Source: Rhodosorus marinus CCMP1338
Taxonomy: Eukaryota; Plantae; Rhodophyta
Length of the DNA: 64,000 bases
Reading direction: 5' to 3'
Assembly (NCBI GenBank): GCA_029953675.1
Contig: JAMWBK010000006.1
Span: 1,426,001-1,490,000, forward strand
In this document: positions 4,781 to 35,388 of the stretch, in pieces
How positions within the stretch are numbered: position 1 is the first letter of the stretch
Layout of the letters: every line of letters starts with the position of its first letter
Notes under the pieces: model-generated
What the model was told of the DNA's origin: nothing
Databases searched by the model: none
The model's input: the letters and a program-made list of their open reading frames with translations, nothing else
Program-made: the position numbers and the translations under genes

Positions 4781-5083
4781 TCGGAAGACGAGAAAAAGCT
4801 GCGCTCCTTTTCAATGCGGATCTCGCTCTTCACAATTCTTAGCTCCAACTTGCATATTTTCTTCAGACTGCAGCGGGTTCATTTACAGAGTCTGATCCAG
4901 GAAAGAAATCTGAGTGTGCTTGCGCCCTGCTCCCTAGTAAAAAAAATAAGTCGATGGAATTTTACTGTAGTGTCGCCGCGTTCATAGATTCTCAGCTCCC
5001 AAATGTGAGAACGGGTCATTCCCTCCCCGGGGCTCCTACGTTCGGAGGGTTACAACAGCTTTGCTATGTCGTCACTGTTAGAA

Positions 5084-6773
5084 TCATATTATGGTATCGA
5101 GAGGGCACGAGTCCCTAATAATTTCCAGTAGACCATCAGCGAAGGCGTCTGAAGAATTGAGGCAGGGAATCAGCAACAGGTCATCCCCACCGGCCGCGAT
5201 GAAGTCCTCCTTTCCTCGAATGCCAATCTCCTCCAGAGTCTCCAGGCAGTCCGTAGTGAATGACGGAATGCAACAAGCCATTCTCCTAACCCCTTTCCTA
5301 GAACAGCGGTAGTGCCACGTTTCACCAAGTCAGTCCTCTCTGCGCAGAGCTCGTCACATCGAAGCTGGACAAGATGCGGACACAACGACTTACTCTGCTA
5401 GCTCCTCTATTACAGCATCCGTGTAAGGCTTAATCCATTCCTTTCCGGCTGCGGATAGGCGGCTTTGGAAGGCCACTGTGTACCTGTCCTCAGTTAATTC
5501 CAAGGTCGCTGCTAGTTTCCGAGCTGTTTCATAGCACTGGGCTCGATAGCAGTTCCTGTTCGCCTGTTCACATGGCATAATGTTCTACTTGAGAAGCCGA
5601 ATTCTCAGGGTGATAATTCATCCACGTGGCCGGTAGCAGGTCCAGAACCTCTGCGCTAAAATACGGATTGAAGTTCAACATAGGATCGATGATAAGCACT
5701 CCATACCTGTACAATTTGTTTGCAGCAGCTGCTATCTCCTTTACAGTGAAGACCTGTCTCGTCCGTGTTGAAGCAGTGTTGCTCCGGTGTTCCATGGAAA
5801 CTCATCAGAAGATGGTCGACCTTTGTCCCGCCCTGCCCAATTGTTTCTCTGATTGTCTCAGCGTAGGCTCTGAGGTACGCGGGATGGTCGAAGAAGGCCG
5901 GGACGACATGAAGGTACGGAGTATTGTAAATCTGTGAACCAAACGGTAAAACGCGAGACAAACGGCTTTGAGACCCTCAAGGCGACAATCGCCTTTTTCA
6001 ATAAGACAAGGGGGTTGCTAGTTGTCGTGCCTTTGCTGCCGCTTTGTACGCAATCTCTACAGCGGCTCCCGTCGCGGATGAGGCGTATTGTGGGTACATT
6101 GGTAAGATGACGATTTTGTCTACTCCGTTACTGCGGAACTTCTCAAACGCCCCACTAATATTCGGCTCACAGTATTGCATGCCCAGCTCGACCATAAATC
6201 CCTCTCCAAGGCGCTCACGCAGTTTCACTGCAAGGTCCTCGGTGTGATATATCAAAGGGGATCTAATTCGAGCACAACCTTCATGTCAAACTCAGCACCC
6301 AAGCACCATCAGACTTAGCACGTCCTACTTACCCCCGGTCCTCATCCCAAATACTGGAATATGCTTCCGCAGATTCCTTTGGTCTGGACGGCAGGATGAA
6401 TAAATTCAATACCAACCACCTGACGATGGGGTTAAGGTCAACTACGCGACCGTCTCCTAGGAACTGCCTGAGATACTCTCGAACATCCTTGACCTCCAGC
6501 GACTTAGGGGATCCAATGTTCATCAGAGCGATGCCTACACAACGAGGGCGACGCGCGTCTGTCAACAACAAAGAAGTCTCAAACCGAAAGAGTACGAAAC
6601 AGCCTACCAGTCTTCCCCCTAAACGGCTCTGGGGAAACAACCTCCAAACCAGGTATCGTCTCCACAGGCGACGCCGTCGTCGCGTAGAACTTCCCTCTCC
6701 CCCGTCGCGGCGCAGCCGAGATACCGCCCCGCCGAGTAGCCAACACGCTCCCGCCAGACACAAATCCTGCCAT
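5084..6773 (-). CDS. hemH: Ferrochelatase (protoporphyrin IX), plastid-targeted, bacterial-type
   Basis: MAGFVSGG transit peptide; [23 protein letters not shown]; LGMQYCEP; [13 protein letters not shown]; LMSFHG; AFQSRL..WIKPYTD; [13 protein letters not shown]; IPCLN. Confidence 0.96.
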
Positions 6774-6898: not shown

Positions 6899-6943
6899 CT
6901 CTCTCCCACCTCTCCCCACCTCTCCCCACCTCTCCCCACCTCT
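6899..6943 (-). repeat. 10-bp tandem repeat (GGTGGGGAGA)x~4.5 upstream of hemH
   Basis: Plus strand reads ctctcccacc tctccccacc tctccccacc tctccccacc tct. Confidence 0.9.
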
Positions 6944-7049
6944 ACCAGTCCACCTTCCCCACCGAACAAACTCCACAGAGCCCCCCTTTACTCAAGCCAA
7001 AAACTACACCCACCCAATTCTCTATTCTCACAGTCTAATTTCATAATCA

Positions 7050-7950
7050 CCCCCTAAGCAGGCAGGCCTTACGCCCCCCCCCCTGAATTCCTTTGCCCAC
7101 CAATATGTTAGCAATCTTCAACCCTCCCTTGCCAATTGAATCTAAAAGCCAATTTATTCTAATTTTAATAATAAACACGTACATTATCGTTTTTCACCTT
7201 TTTTATCATCATACCCTCTTACTACTGTCAGGATGAAGGTCGCGGCAAACAAACCCCCGAAAACAAAACAAAAAATCTCATCAGATTGCGGGGCCGTCCT
7301 CCCCTGTGAAAGAAAAAAGCAAAAACACAAACAAACAAAACCTCCTCCTTGTCCGCGCTAATAAAATCCTATTAAATTATATTCATTATTAATGATTAGT
7401 CGGTCTACTATATATCCACCAAGTGGTGAGATTAGCCAATAGTCATCTAATGATCTCGTCCCGTCCATAAATATCGATCCCCCGAACGAATATCATCTAC
7501 CGAAACAAAAACACCAGTATTTTGTTTTAGTCTCTTGGTTTTTTTTTGTTATGTTTTATCACTGTATGACTTTTTCCTCCTTTAACGAAAGAATCCTTTC
7601 AAAACCCTAGAAAAGGAGGAAACTAACGAGATAATAGATAAACCGTGATAAAAATTCTTTATTTCATTTTTATTCAATCTATTATGGCGTTATTGACTAA
7701 GTTTAATCTCGGAAAAGGCTTTTGCGGCGGCTCGATGAGAAAAGGGTTGGGTGTAAAATGTTAATATTTAGATGCATTTGACGAAATTATATCATCAGAA
7801 AAAAGAATTTTACGGGGACCGACGTGTTTTAATACAATAGTTATTTTGGATGTTGTTCAATATCAATATTGGTATAGAAATAATGGGTCTATTTGTAATT
7901 CTTCTTGATTATGATAGATTCGATTTGATTTGAGGTTCTGAAAAAGAGAA
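7050..7950. promoter_or_regulatory. AT-rich divergent promoter region with a CCAAT box
   Basis: AT-rich, no long ORFs; AGCCAAT near 7434; C/A-rich to G/T-rich composition switch between the divergent transcription units. Confidence 0.55.
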
Positions 7951-11391: not shown

Positions 11392-14300
11392 CTACGCAGC
11401 CGGGGTTTCTATATCTACGAGCACGTCAATCCGCAGCGACTCAAGTTTCGCTTTCAACTGTGCATTGTCGTGCCAGGCGCGATCATCCCGGGAAACGCTC
11501 AATAGAGCCGTGAGCTCGTCCTCCGCAAAAGACTCCAGAATGCGGCTGACCAACTCTGCCTTGCGGCCTTTCGTTGATGCTCCCTTGACGTAAAGTATTC
11601 TTCGGAGGAGGACGACTGTCATTGACCAAAGAACGGATTGAGGGCTCTTTGGCTCTCCTTCAGGTGCACCGGATTGGGAGTCCTCCCCCTCACACATAGA
11701 CTCAGCCCTCGTGACTTCGCTGCGCTCGCTCTTGATCTCGCTTGCGTTCTCGACATTCGCCGAATTCATATTCTCCTTCTCTCCAGACGCGTCAAAGCTC
11801 TCTCGCAAGCTCAAGGGTTTCATATCATCAACACCCGCTGGACGTTCCCTTCTTTCTCCGTCACCCAGCGAAGGTGCCTCGCACAGAACATTTGATAGAG
11901 GAACATTTCCCAAGGTCTGTGGAGACAGATTTCCAGCTGTGGAGCGTCGAATTTCCCTCTTCGGTGAGTAGTGTGCCCCGCTTGCAAGTTCAATCCCAGC
12001 TCCCACGGCGTCCGCGAAGAATACACACTTTCTTCGTCTAGACGATGCGCATGAGTTGGGAGTCTTCAGACAAGATCTTTCCTCCGGTTCTCGACTTGAC
12101 GCCAGCCGAATGTGTACATCCTGAAGATCGCCACGTACACAGATAAGGTTTACCTTAGCTCTCCACTTTGACTCTAAAGCAAAACGAACTGGACTAGGCG
12201 AGATGTCTCGCACAGAAGATCTCGAGCTTACCTGTGGACTGGCATGGGACTCGGACTGCTGTGCTTGCTGTCTTGTTGCACTTGCTTCATCTTCTGTTCT
12301 GCTGGGAAGTTTTCTCAAGTGAGAAGATAGAACTTGCATGTCCATGCTTGCTCCGTCTGAACTCGCAGAATCGTGCTGCACCTCTTCCGACAGCGCTGGG
12401 CTGTTCGCGAAGTCCTGCTCGTGAGATAAATCAGTTGCAATTTCCGTAGTAGATTCGCCCTCAGGTGATTGTCCCTTCGGGCACCCGTCGACTGGTGAGA
12501 AAGACCCTTGCGGAGTTGAACTGATACTCTGCGAGTAGGAGTCTCTCTGGATCTGATCACAACTTTCTTCGGTAAAATTGATAGTCCGAACTTGGGGAGA
12601 AACAGAAAGAGCTCTCTTCGCTTGCTGTTGGCTCAGCCTCGTGCTCCTTCTCGGGGTTGACAGCGGTCTGGCATCTGGAACCGACGCCCTTGCCGATGAC
12701 GGTGTATCCGATCCGTTTTGTTTCTCCAAAGCTGAGACCATTGGTGAGCTGGACACTCGTTTCGCTGCTCTGGTATGACTTAGAATGTTTCTTACATTGT
12801 CCTGAGAGATTCCGCAGGATGCTATCGCAGTCTCAATCGGTTCCTGTTTCCCACTGTCATTGCACATGTCAACGCTGTCTTTCGGGTTGGCGGGCGTCGC
12901 GACTGCGTTCACTGGAAGCTCCTTCGCGAGTCTTACTCTCGGTGTGGTAACAGCATCCAAGGGGAGTTCCCCTGAAACCCGAATTCTTGGCGTTGCCGCA
13001 TCCTCACGAGGAAGTTCGGGGTATCGAACGCAGGGCGTGGCCACTGAATTTACCGGTAGCTCCTTAGACAACCGTACCCTTGGTGTCATAACTGCGTCTG
13101 TGGGTAACTCCTTGGCAAACAGAACCGGCGACGTTCCCACAGCTTCGGGAAGCTGTTGGGAGAGGCGAGCATTTGGAGTCCTCGCCTCGTCTAGCAGAGA
13201 TTCTTTTGTAAGTCGAACGCTTGGCGTTGCCAAGGCGTTCACAGGGAGTTCCTTGGCCAAACGAACGCGAGGGCTCGTGATAGCATTCACGGGAAGCTCC
13301 TTAGCCAGTCGAAAGTTCGGTGTAGTTGCGGCATTCACAGGAAGTTCCGTTGACATCCTCATCCTGGGACTTGTGCCCAGATTCACTGAAAGCTCTTTCT
13401 CATGGTTCATATTCGGAGTCACAAAGCCATCCATTGGAGGAGCTTCCGCGATAGGCGGTTCCGGGGTTTGCTGAAGCTCTTGGTCTTCGGCATTGAGCTG
13501 GATATCGGCTGCCACAGGGATCGCTTGAGGCACACGCTTCGGAGTAGCGACTGCGTTTACAGGCAGCTCCTTCGAGAGCCTTATCCTTGGTGTAACCAAT
13601 GCCTCGATTGGAAGCTCATTCTCGTAGTTACTTCCTGGAGTTTTTGCGACACTTCCTGCCGAGTGTCTTGGGTTTGCTTGCGCAGGTGTGTTGGCTACGT
13701 TCCTCGAACGTGACCTGGTAACCCGCACACTGGGCGTGTATTCGGTATCCATTATCTGAGATTTGGGCGTACCAGGATCTGCCGCCATGGAATTCGTAGA
13801 CTCGTATCGTGGAGTGAGTGCTTCGCTCTCTACGGCTGGGGCTTCTGGTGTCTTTACAGCGTTCACTGGGAGCTCCCTCGATATTCTGAATGTCGGAGTT
13901 GAGACTGCATTGACAGGAAGCTCTTTTGACAGTGACATTCTCGGTGTTCTGGAACCCTCTAAAGGCGATTCTTTGCCTGAAGTCTCTCCCGAGCTTATTG
14001 CAACGTCCTTCAGGGAATCTTCCTCTCCGTGAGCAGGACTGCATGGAGTTTCGGCTTCTCCTTCTACGTCAGAGCGAACACTCTGCTCCACAGCAATGTT
14101 CGTGTCTTCTGCAGAACTGGTAATAGAGTTGTCTGGCAAGGAAGAAGATACAGGGTTAAAGGTTCGTCAGGATGTGGGAGCGAAGCCCTTGGTCTTAGAG
14201 ATCCGGATATAGGGCTTGATGCTTACCTTTGGATCCTCCCCTCAAGTCCTGAAGCAATCGCTTAGGCGAAAAGATTGCGTTCACGGGTAGAAACTTGCTC

Positions 14301-34578: not shown

Positions 34579-35388
34579 ATGGATCTGAGTTACGTTTTCG
34601 TGCACTCTGGAGCGGAGATTGTGCTTCTTTGGCTTTGTCTAGTGGGACTGGCGCTGCTGCAGAATTCTGTTGTGGAGCCTGGTTTGAATGCGGTGTGGCC
34701 GGAGGAGTGGACAATTAAACCGGGGTTCATAACTGTGTCGCAGGTTGATAAGTTCAATTGGGTTTCGTTTCTTCTCTGGCTCACTGTGAACTTGTTCTCA
34801 TCGTTTGTACTTCATCTGCCGACTTTGTGGACCCGAAGGGTTCAAGTTAGACGGCCGCTGCAGCCTTTGGACCCCAAATGGTATGACAGCTTGAAGAAAC
34901 CGTTTTGGAATCCGTCCAACCTGTTCTTCCCGCTGGCATGGGTGCCGGCTAAGCTTCTGAAGTCTGTGGTTAATGCAATGATGTGGGAGGTGTGTGGGAG
35001 GAGAGTTTACGCGCTTCCTATACTCAGCTACATCACTTGTGTTGTTGTGGCTGACCTGTGGAACCAAGTTTTCTTTGTTCAACACGACTTGAGCGGGTCG
35101 GTTGCTGTGATTTGGATGCTGAATATATTGGAATGGGCTAACTTCTTAGCAACAGAGTACTATTTGCACGGAGCTCATCAACTACTGTACCCGCTTCTGT
35201 TTGCCCTTCTGTTTGCGGCAGCATTGGCAACTCATATTGCAATTTTGAACCCGGCGGCGTTTAAAAGACAGGAATTGACTGCAAAAGTGCTTTCGACCAC
35301 TGAACCATTGGAAGGGAAGCACGAAGTTCATGCAAAGGCGGATAAGAACCTCACGCATGCTCCTTCGTTTGTAACACATTCGGCATGA
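34579..35388 (+). CDS. TspO/MBR family membrane protein, single exon
   Basis: PKWYDSLKKPFWNPS..FPLAW; LWNQVFFVQHDL; hydrophobic helices. Confidence 0.85.
   Translation: MDLSYVFVHSGAEIVLLWLCLVGLALLQNSVVEPGLNAVWPEEWTIKPGFITVSQVDKFNWVSFLLWLTVNLFSSFVLHLPTLWTRRVQVRRPLQPLDPKWYDSLKKPFWNPSNLFFPLAWVPAKLLKSVVNAMMWEVCGRRVYALPILSYITCVVVADLWNQVFFVQHDLSGSVAVIWMLNILEWANFLATEYYLHGAHQLLYPLLFALLFAAALATHIAILNPAAFKRQELTAKVLSTTEPLEGKHEVHAKADKNLTHAPSFVTHSA

What the first reader, a model, noticed from the sequence alone, without database searches (positions are those of the whole stretch)
5549..5745. Plastid ferrochelatase with an intron-split internal C-X5-CC-X9-C motif
Seen: removing intron 5564-5706 gives [14 protein letters not shown]|[10 protein letters not shown], four Cys within 18 residues, which the ORF track cannot show. 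There is no C-terminal CAB domain or C-terminal Cys cluster. Known: Myxococcus xanthus-type ferrochelatases ligate [2Fe-2S] through four Cys in an internal ~20-residue segment; plant and cyanobacterial enzymes lack a cluster and animal ones use mainly C-terminal Cys. Inference: a bacterially acquired, Fe-S-bearing ferrochelatase in the plastid that could couple haem (and phycobilin) synthesis to Fe-S status.
Basis: partly seen in the sequence, partly recalled or inferred. Interest (0 to 1): 0.75.

Follow-up and report, generated by a model that had tools for sequence, protein, structure and literature searches.

The report
Red algal ferrochelatase with internal Fe-S motif
This is the nuclear ferrochelatase gene (last step of haem synthesis) of the red alga Rhodosorus marinus; an intron splits a four-cysteine motif that binds an iron-sulfur cluster in related bacterial enzymes, a motif shared by all red algae examined but apparently not yet pointed out in eukaryotes.

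Summary
On the minus strand a six-exon gene (CDS 6773-5084) encodes a 402-aa ferrochelatase identical to GenBank KAJ8904149.1 of Rhodosorus marinus. The intron at 5706-5564 (GT..AG, 143 nt, phase 0) is absent from a transcript of a related strain. Splicing gives C263-x5-C269-C270-x9-C280.

These four Cys are invariant in 121/121 closest homologues: red algae, dinoflagellates and many bacteria. They lie at the internal insertion that binds a [2Fe-2S] cluster in the Myxococcus xanthus and Pseudomonas syringae enzymes. There is no CAB domain and no C-terminal Cys cluster.

- The non-cyanobacterial, bacteria-like origin of red algal ferrochelatase is already published. My trees do not resolve the donor: Myxococcota are closest by similarity only.
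- "Plastid" is unsettled. An N-terminal phenylalanine motif (MAGFV; MAFV in most orthologues) argues for the plastid, but the Cyanidioschyzon merolae orthologue was found in mitochondria.
- Cluster binding and coupling to Fe-S status are inferences, not shown.

I found no paper noting this motif in a eukaryote, and the 2021 survey of ferrochelatase Fe-S motifs sampled no red algae. Verdict: a new (eukaryotic) member of a known class, of moderate interest.

The parts
5084..6773 (-). Ferrochelatase coding region (ATG 6773-6771 to stop 5086-5084). Six exons: 6773-6608, 6534-6333, 6262-6031, 5931-5707, 5563-5394, 5297-5084. Product 402 aa.
   Evidence: Model built. It is identical to P0121/KAJ8904149.1. 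Exon blocks match transcript L001. Pfam PF00762, E 1.4e-91.
5564..5706 (-). Intron 4 (143 nt, GT..AG, phase 0), lying between Gln275 and Ala276 inside the Cys motif.
   Evidence: Absent from the related-strain transcript.
5743..5745 (-). Cys263 codon, first Cys of the motif (exon 4).
   Evidence: Invariant in 121/121.
5722..5727 (-). Cys269-Cys270 codons, the XCCX pair typical of insertion-type [2Fe-2S] ferrochelatases (exon 4).
   Evidence: Invariant in 121/121. Both adjacent Cys are reported as cluster ligands in the bacterial class (PMC8529089).
5549..5551 (-). Cys280 codon, fourth Cys, in the core CYRAQC element (exon 5).
   Evidence: Invariant in 121/121. Present in 148/151 representatives, including ones without the insertion.
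5534..5536 (-). Cys285 codon, a variable fifth Cys that is unlikely to be an obligatory ligand.
   Evidence: C in 68, S in 48, A in 5 of 121.
5794..5796 (-). His246 codon (SFHG), equivalent to the catalytic His263 of human FECH.
   Evidence: Invariant in 121/121. Alignment to human FECH.
6624..6773 (-). N-terminal presequence (about residues 1-50) beginning MAGFV. It is absent from bacterial homologues and disordered in the model.
   Evidence: pLDDT 40-53 for residues 1-30.
5932..6030 (-). Intron 3, with a non-canonical GC donor (AAG|GCACGA ... CACAG).
   Evidence: It is the only frame-preserving junction that reproduces YKAAAK|IYNTPYLH, as seen in P0001/P0121 and the red algal homologues. The transcript block boundaries are 6031/5936.
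4901..5083 (-). 3' UTR (at least this far).
   Evidence: Transcript L001 aligns through to 4901, the edge of the region compared.

Best explanation
The locus is the nuclear gene for the protoporphyrin ferrochelatase of the red alga Rhodosorus marinus. The enzyme belongs to the subfamily that carries a roughly 20-residue internal insertion between the catalytic SFHG strand and the CYRAQC helix.

Three Cys of that insertion (C263, C269, C270) plus C280 at its C-terminal edge most likely ligate one [2Fe-2S] cluster next to the active-site pocket. This is what has been shown for the homologous Myxococcus xanthus and Pseudomonas syringae enzymes. A spliceosomal intron happens to interrupt the motif, so it is invisible in single ORFs.

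The gene is a bona fide eukaryotic gene: it has five introns, an organellar presequence and a transcript. It descends from a bacterial-type ferrochelatase that replaced the cyanobacterial one in the red algal lineage and was passed on to peridinin dinoflagellates.

The cluster would be inserted by the Fe-S machinery of whichever organelle hosts the enzyme (SUF in the plastid, ISC in the mitochondrion). That would make the amount or activity of holo-enzyme depend on iron, Fe-S supply or redox state.

Shown: gene structure, splice junction, family membership, motif conservation, and absence of CAB or C-terminal motifs. Inferred: cluster binding, host organelle, and any regulatory role.
For: - Gene model and junction.
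- Ferrochelatase identity and fold.
- Four Cys invariant in 121/121 closest homologues spanning red algae, dinoflagellates and several bacterial phyla, and present in 113/151 cluster representatives.
- Relatives that lack the insertion have an 18-20 residue gap exactly here.
- The motif matches the published definition, CX(1,11)CX(1,11)C with an XCCX grouping in a 22-34 aa internal insertion. 97% of insertions in that survey carry the motif, and M. xanthus and P. syringae are listed there among the eight characterised cluster-containing ferrochelatases (PMC8529089).
- The insertion is modelled with pLDDT 78-91.
- Red algae form one clade (bootstrap (BS) 87-100%) that joins a dinoflagellate-containing clade (BS 100%) inside the insertion-type radiation.
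Against: No eukaryotic member has been purified or examined spectroscopically. Four-Cys sites can also bind Zn or form disulfides. I could not read the primary 2006 paper and rely on its summary in PMC8529089. A 2026 review notes that loss of the cluster does not necessarily abolish activity in bacterial ferrochelatases (PMC13564367), so a regulatory role is speculative. Some members of the sister eukaryotic clade have lost the CC pair or the whole insertion (P0132, P0133, P0274), so the cluster can be dispensable.
Confidence: 0.75

Rival explanations
1. The enzyme works in the mitochondrion, not the plastid. The cluster would then be made by the ISC pathway, and haem for phycobilins would be imported into the plastid. 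This rivals only the 'plastid' part of the reading.
For: The only experimental localisation of an orthologue places C. merolae ferrochelatase in mitochondria and not plastids (Watanabe 2013, as cited in PMC7209954, and PMC11914136). C. merolae also starts MFVVV, so an N-terminal Phe does not guarantee plastid import. The presequence is Arg-rich and lacks acidic residues, which also fits a mitochondrial presequence.
Against: 34 of 46 full-length red algal orthologues have Phe within residues 2-6, mostly MAF[VIL]. This is the motif rhodophytes use to distinguish plastid from mitochondrial precursors (PMC7038456). Dinoflagellate members of the same clade are attributed to the peridinin-plastid repertoire (PMC5115734).
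Confidence: 0.45
2. The conserved Cys quartet is a structural Zn site or a disulfide-stabilised loop in the eukaryotic enzymes, and no Fe-S cluster is present.
For: There are no biochemical data for any red algal or dinoflagellate enzyme (literature searches). Cys4 knuckles often bind Zn.
Against: The motif is homologous, not merely similar, to the one in the characterised M. xanthus and P. syringae enzymes. It has the same position, the same CC pair and a continuous family (PMC8529089).
Confidence: 0.15
3. Artefact: bacterial contamination in the assembly, or a wrong splice model that creates the motif.
For: The closest non-eukaryotic relatives are bacterial.
Against: The gene has five introns with GT/GC..AG borders, a 50-residue presequence, an independent spliced transcript from a related strain, and orthologues in every red algal class sampled.
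Confidence: 0.01

Closest known systems
Insertion-type [2Fe-2S] protoporphyrin ferrochelatases of bacteria (Myxococcus xanthus, Pseudomonas syringae; Shepherd, Dailey & Dailey 2006; surveyed in Weerth et al. 2021, PMC8529089)
   Same: Internal insertion at the same position, C...CC...C motif with the XCCX pair, no C-terminal Cys tail, and 50-54% identity to Myxococcota-type members.
   Different: This one is eukaryotic and nuclear, intron-containing, and has an organellar presequence. The 2021 survey lists insertions only in bacterial phyla and sampled no Rhodophyta. Cluster binding has not been tested here.
Cyanidioschyzon merolae ferrochelatase (P0058)
   Same: Orthologue with 57% identity and the same four Cys. 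Literature states that only chlorophytes among primary algae acquired FeCH from cyanobacteria (PMC11914136); whether red algae carry a single FeCH gene was not tested here.
   Different: It is reported to be mitochondrial. The Rhodosorus and most other red algal presequences show the MAF-type plastid motif more clearly.
Metazoan ferrochelatase (human FECH, PDB 1HRK)
   Same: Same fold (TM 0.79), same catalytic His and Glu, and a [2Fe-2S] cluster near the active-site pocket.
   Different: The human ligands are one internal Cys plus three in a C-terminal extension that is absent here. Identity is only about 22%.
Plant and cyanobacterial ferrochelatase with C-terminal CAB domain
   Same: Same reaction in a phototroph.
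   Different: Those enzymes have no Cys cluster and carry a CAB (EXXNXR) extension. The window protein ends right after the catalytic core (PMC8529089).
Arabidopsis plastid sirohydrochlorin ferrochelatase SIRB
   Same: A plastid class II chelatase that, unlike its bacterial orthologues, carries a [2Fe-2S] cluster. The cluster is not required for catalysis and is proposed to be regulatory (PMC6006212).
   Different: A different chelatase family branch and substrate. It is an analogy only.

Membership tests
Ferrochelatase (Pfam PF00762, class II chelatase) | Significant match to the family profile over the full domain | tested here: met
   E 1.4e-91, 307 bits, profile positions 2-315 of 317.
Ferrochelatase (Pfam PF00762, class II chelatase) | Catalytic His (human H263) and the acidic ETL element (human E343) | tested here: met
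   H246 in SFHG and E351 in DCLETLEE are invariant in the alignments.
Ferrochelatase (Pfam PF00762, class II chelatase) | Two-lobed ferrochelatase fold | tested here: met
   AF2 pLDDT 89.7. The best Foldseek hits are human, yeast and Bacillus ferrochelatases (TM 0.75-0.86 by target length).
Insertion-type [2Fe-2S] ferrochelatases | Internal insertion after the catalytic His strand, relative to cluster-less enzymes | tested here: met
   The human alignment breaks between residues 232 and 288. Insertion-less relatives (P0217, P0226, P0252, P0274) have an 18-20 residue gap here.
Insertion-type [2Fe-2S] ferrochelatases | CX(1,11)CX(1,11)C motif with XCCX grouping inside or at the insertion | tested here: met
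   C263-x5-C269-C270-x9-C280, invariant in 121/121. Definition from PMC8529089.
Insertion-type [2Fe-2S] ferrochelatases | Phylogenetic placement among insertion-bearing sequences | tested here: met
   All nearest relatives carry the insertion. The eukaryotic clade sits inside that radiation and apart from Bacteroidota and Verrucomicrobiota. The exact sister group is unresolved.
Insertion-type [2Fe-2S] ferrochelatases | Physical presence of a [2Fe-2S] cluster (UV-visible, EPR, Fe/S content) | not testable with these tools
   Needs purified protein.
Metazoan-type C-terminal [2Fe-2S] ferrochelatase | C-terminal extension with three ligand Cys | tested here: not met
   The protein ends ...[10 protein letters not shown] with a single Cys (C396).
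Cyanobacterial/plant ferrochelatase with CAB domain | C-terminal CAB helix with EXXNXR | tested here: not met
   There is no C-terminal extension, and no second Pfam domain passed its curated threshold.
Rhodophyte plastid-targeted nuclear proteins | F-based motif at the extreme N-terminus of a cleavable presequence | tested here: inconclusive
   MAGFV is present, and 34/46 orthologues have F in residues 2-6. However, the C. merolae orthologue (MFVVV) is reported to be mitochondrial. No targeting predictor or experiment was available.

The most novel reading that the evidence does not exclude
Red algae and peridinin dinoflagellates possess the only eukaryotic ferrochelatases of the bacterial insertion type. 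In most red algae the enzyme would be imported into the plastid. There a SUF-made [2Fe-2S] cluster would gate the haem/phycobilin branch of tetrapyrrole synthesis according to iron, Fe-S or redox status. That would be a plastid counterpart of the Fe-S dependence of animal mitochondrial FECH, arrived at independently.
Probability: 0.25. Interest if true: 0.6.

Novelty: new member of a known kind. Interest (0 to 1): 0.4.

Why it matters
The function of the ferrochelatase [2Fe-2S] cluster is still undefined (PMC8529089; PMC13564367). Current summaries treat eukaryotic clusters as C-terminal and internal ones as bacterial.

Recognising that a whole eukaryotic lineage uses the internal type has three consequences:
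- It corrects that picture.
- It adds a candidate to the list of organellar Fe-S client proteins in red algae.
- It offers genetically tractable phototrophs (C. merolae, Porphyridium) in which Cys-to-Ser alleles could test whether the cluster links haem and bilin output to iron/Fe-S supply.

For this window specifically, the gene is an ordinary, already deposited housekeeping gene.

Tried and rejected
- My first acceptor for intron 1 (exon 2 starting at 6558, giving ...[15 protein letters not shown]) was wrong. Homologues and P0001/P0121 show the acceptor that starts exon 2 at 6534 (...GKTGIALMN).
- For intron 3 I enumerated all GT and GC donors. The canonical GT options delete or add residues relative to every homologue. 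The GC donor after 6031 is the one used.
- The primary paper on the insertion class (Shepherd 2006, PMC1479749) is not held.
- Rooting the 270-sequence NJ tree on P0274 was misleading, because that sequence belongs to the second eukaryote-like clade.
- The NJ backbone among bacteria has about 0% support, so no donor phylum can be named.
- The AF2 output gives no coordinates, so S-S distances between the four Cys could not be measured.
- tRNA scan of the window: none found.

Full report
**What is there**

The finding lies on the minus strand. Reading that strand and testing splice combinations gives a six-exon gene. The exons are 6773-6608, 6534-6333, 6262-6031, 5931-5707, 5563-5394 and 5297-5084.

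The five introns are 73, 70, 99, 143 and 96 nt long. Four have GT..AG borders. One (6030-5932) has a GC donor.

The product is 402 aa. It is identical to P0121, GenBank KAJ8904149.1, 'hypothetical protein NDN08_000676 [Rhodosorus marinus]', which UniRef names ferrochelatase. The window is therefore nuclear DNA of the unicellular red alga Rhodosorus marinus.

**The splice junction**

Intron 4 spans 5706-5564. Its donor is CAG|GTATGG and its acceptor GAACAG|GCG, and it is phase 0. Because its length of 143 nt is not a multiple of three, retaining it would break the frame.

An intron-less transcript contig from a closely related strain provides direct support (L001, JGI sample 3300016967, about 90% nt identity, encoding P0001 at 96% aa identity). 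It aligns to the window in six blocks: 6788-6605, 6535-6333, 6263-6031, 5936-5706, 5570-5389 and 5297-4901. These are exactly the exon set, including the GC-AG intron and the junction inside the motif.

The finding's coordinates 5549-5745 run from the first base of the Cys263 codon to the last base of the Cys280 codon.

**The protein**

- Pfam gives Ferrochelatase PF00762 at E 1.4e-91 over the whole domain.
- An AlphaFold2 model built on 86 homologues has mean pLDDT 89.7. The first 30 or so residues are disordered, and the insertion region scores 78-91.
- Foldseek's best matches are human, yeast and Bacillus ferrochelatases, with TM 0.79 to human FECH at about 22% identity.
- The catalytic His (H246, SFHG) and the ETLEE element are invariant.
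- The protein ends ...[10 protein letters not shown]. It has no CAB domain and no C-terminal Cys triad.

**The motif**

Splicing yields H-C263-KGDSS-C269-C270-KQIVQ|ANRN-C280-YRAQ-C285.

In an alignment of the window protein with the 120 best database hits, C263, C269, C270 and C280 and their spacing are invariant in 121/121 sequences. C285 is Cys in 68, Ser in 48 and Ala in 5. C253 is Cys in 77.

The same quartet is present in 113 of 151 representatives of 50%-identity clusters. It also occurs in genomes labelled Myxococcota, Sericytochromatia, Planctomycetaceae, Acidobacteria, Acidimicrobiia, Chloroflexota, Verrucomicrobiota, Flavobacteriia, Fibrobacteria and SAR324.

Relatives without the insertion show an 18-20 residue gap at exactly this place, yet keep C280 in the core CYRxQC element.

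This matches the published description of the 'internal insertion' class. That class has a 22-34 aa insertion carrying CX(1,11)CX(1,11)C with an XCCX pair, in which both adjacent Cys are ligands. It is listed among the characterised cluster-containing enzymes for M. xanthus and P. syringae, and 97% of insertions in that survey carry the motif (Weerth, Medlock & Dailey 2021, PMC8529089).

**Relatives and origin**

The best hits are red algae of every class sampled. They include Rhodosorus, Gracilariopsis, Gracilaria, Eucheuma, Porphyridium, Galdieria, Cyanidium and C. merolae, at 57-96% identity. Next come sequences with long N-terminal extensions that include the dinoflagellates Pelagodinium beii and Polarella glacialis. 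After these come bacteria at 50-54% identity. Every one of those bacterial hits that carries a name is Myxococcota or 'Deltaproteobacteria'.

NJ trees were built from 270 and 88 sequences, with 100 and 200 bootstraps respectively. They give:
- a red algal clade (BS 100% and 87.5%);
- its union with the dinoflagellate-containing clade (BS 100%);
- clear separation from Bacteroidota, Verrucomicrobiota and some Gammaproteobacteria.

The bacterial sister of the eukaryotic clade is unresolved, with BS below 30%. A truncated scan of GTDB species genomes puts Sericytochromatia, Deltaproteobacteria, Thermoanaerobaculia, Bradymonadia and Planctomycetaceae at 46-50% identity.

The replacement itself is established in the literature. 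Rhodophytes plus peridinin dinoflagellates form a ferrochelatase clade of 'unclear but might be proteobacterial' origin (PMC5115734). [quoted passage not shown] Among primary algae, only chlorophytes took FeCH from cyanobacteria (PMC11914136).

**Plastid or mitochondrion**

The 50-residue presequence starts MAGFV. Among 46 full-length red algal orthologues, 34 have Phe within residues 2-6, mostly MAF[V/I/L]. Rhodophytes and glaucophytes use exactly such an N-terminal Phe motif to direct proteins to the plastid and to tell them apart from mitochondrial precursors (PMC7038456). This favours plastid import.

Against this, the only experimental result for an orthologue is that C. merolae ferrochelatase is found in mitochondria, not plastids (Watanabe et al. 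2013, as cited in PMC7209954, and PMC11914136). That protein also begins MFVVV.

I treat the location of the Rhodosorus enzyme as undecided, at roughly even odds.

**Mechanism**

The most likely mechanism is as follows. After import and presequence removal, the local Fe-S machinery inserts a [2Fe-2S] cluster into the C263/C269/C270/C280 site beside the active-site pocket. The holo-enzyme then inserts Fe2+ into protoporphyrin IX.

Whether the cluster is needed for activity or stability, or acts as a sensor, is unknown even for the bacterial and animal enzymes (PMC13564367).

Plastid sirohydrochlorin ferrochelatase of Arabidopsis offers a precedent. It is a chelatase whose [2Fe-2S] cluster is dispensable for catalysis and possibly regulatory (PMC6006212).

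Some members of the sister eukaryotic clade have lost the CC pair or the whole insertion, so the cluster is not indispensable everywhere.

**Novelty**

The gene, its protein model, the class of internal-cluster ferrochelatases and the odd phylogeny of red algal ferrochelatase are all known.

What I could not find in the searchable literature is any statement that red algal or dinoflagellate ferrochelatases carry the internal Fe-S motif. The dedicated 2021 survey lists insertions only in bacterial phyla and contains no Rhodophyta.

I therefore rate the finding as a new (eukaryotic) member of a known kind. It is of moderate interest and not specific to this window.

Noticed in passing
window 5932-6030 (-): Intron 3 of the ferrochelatase gene uses a non-canonical GC donor (AAG|GCACGA). 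The junction is confirmed by the deposited protein model and by a related-strain transcript.
   Followed up: yes
window 34579-35388 (+): An ORF of 269 aa matches the TspO/MBR family (PF03073, E 3.7e-12), a tetrapyrrole/haem-binding membrane protein family. It lies about 28 kb from the ferrochelatase gene. The proximity is probably coincidental.
   Followed up: no
window ~6905-6945: A CT-rich short tandem repeat (cctctcccca-type units) lies about 130-170 nt upstream of the ferrochelatase ATG, in the putative promoter/5' region. It is followed by an AT-rich intergenic stretch at about 7100-7900.
   Followed up: no
window 11392-14139 (-): This is the longest uninterrupted ORF in the window (915 aa). 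Its only match is a sub-threshold SAP-domain hit near the C-terminus (E 7.4e-05, 22.7 bits against a cut-off of 23.9).
   Followed up: no
proteins P0132, P0133, P0274: Within the second eukaryote-like clade, which contains the dinoflagellates Pelagodinium and Polarella, some sequences have lost the CC pair or the whole insertion. This suggests secondary loss of the putative cluster site.
   Followed up: partly
window protein residues 253 and 396 (codons at 5775-5773 and 5104-5102, minus strand): Two further Cys are conserved mainly in the eukaryotic members. One is C253 (HC, 77/121). The other is C396 in the red-algal C-terminal signature DSCP(M/L)(D/E)TF (61/121). Their role is unknown.
   Followed up: no
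loci L003, L005: Among GTDB species genomes, MAGs labelled Candidatus Sericytochromatia (non-photosynthetic relatives of cyanobacteria) are among the most similar bacterial ferrochelatases (46-50% identity) and carry the full motif. The scan was truncated and trees do not resolve any special relationship.
   Followed up: partly
protein P0260: This is a 994-aa database protein whose C-terminal part (about residues 764-985) is this ferrochelatase type. Its N-terminus looks like a MutL/MLH-type protein, so it is probably a chimeric transcript assembly.
   Followed up: no
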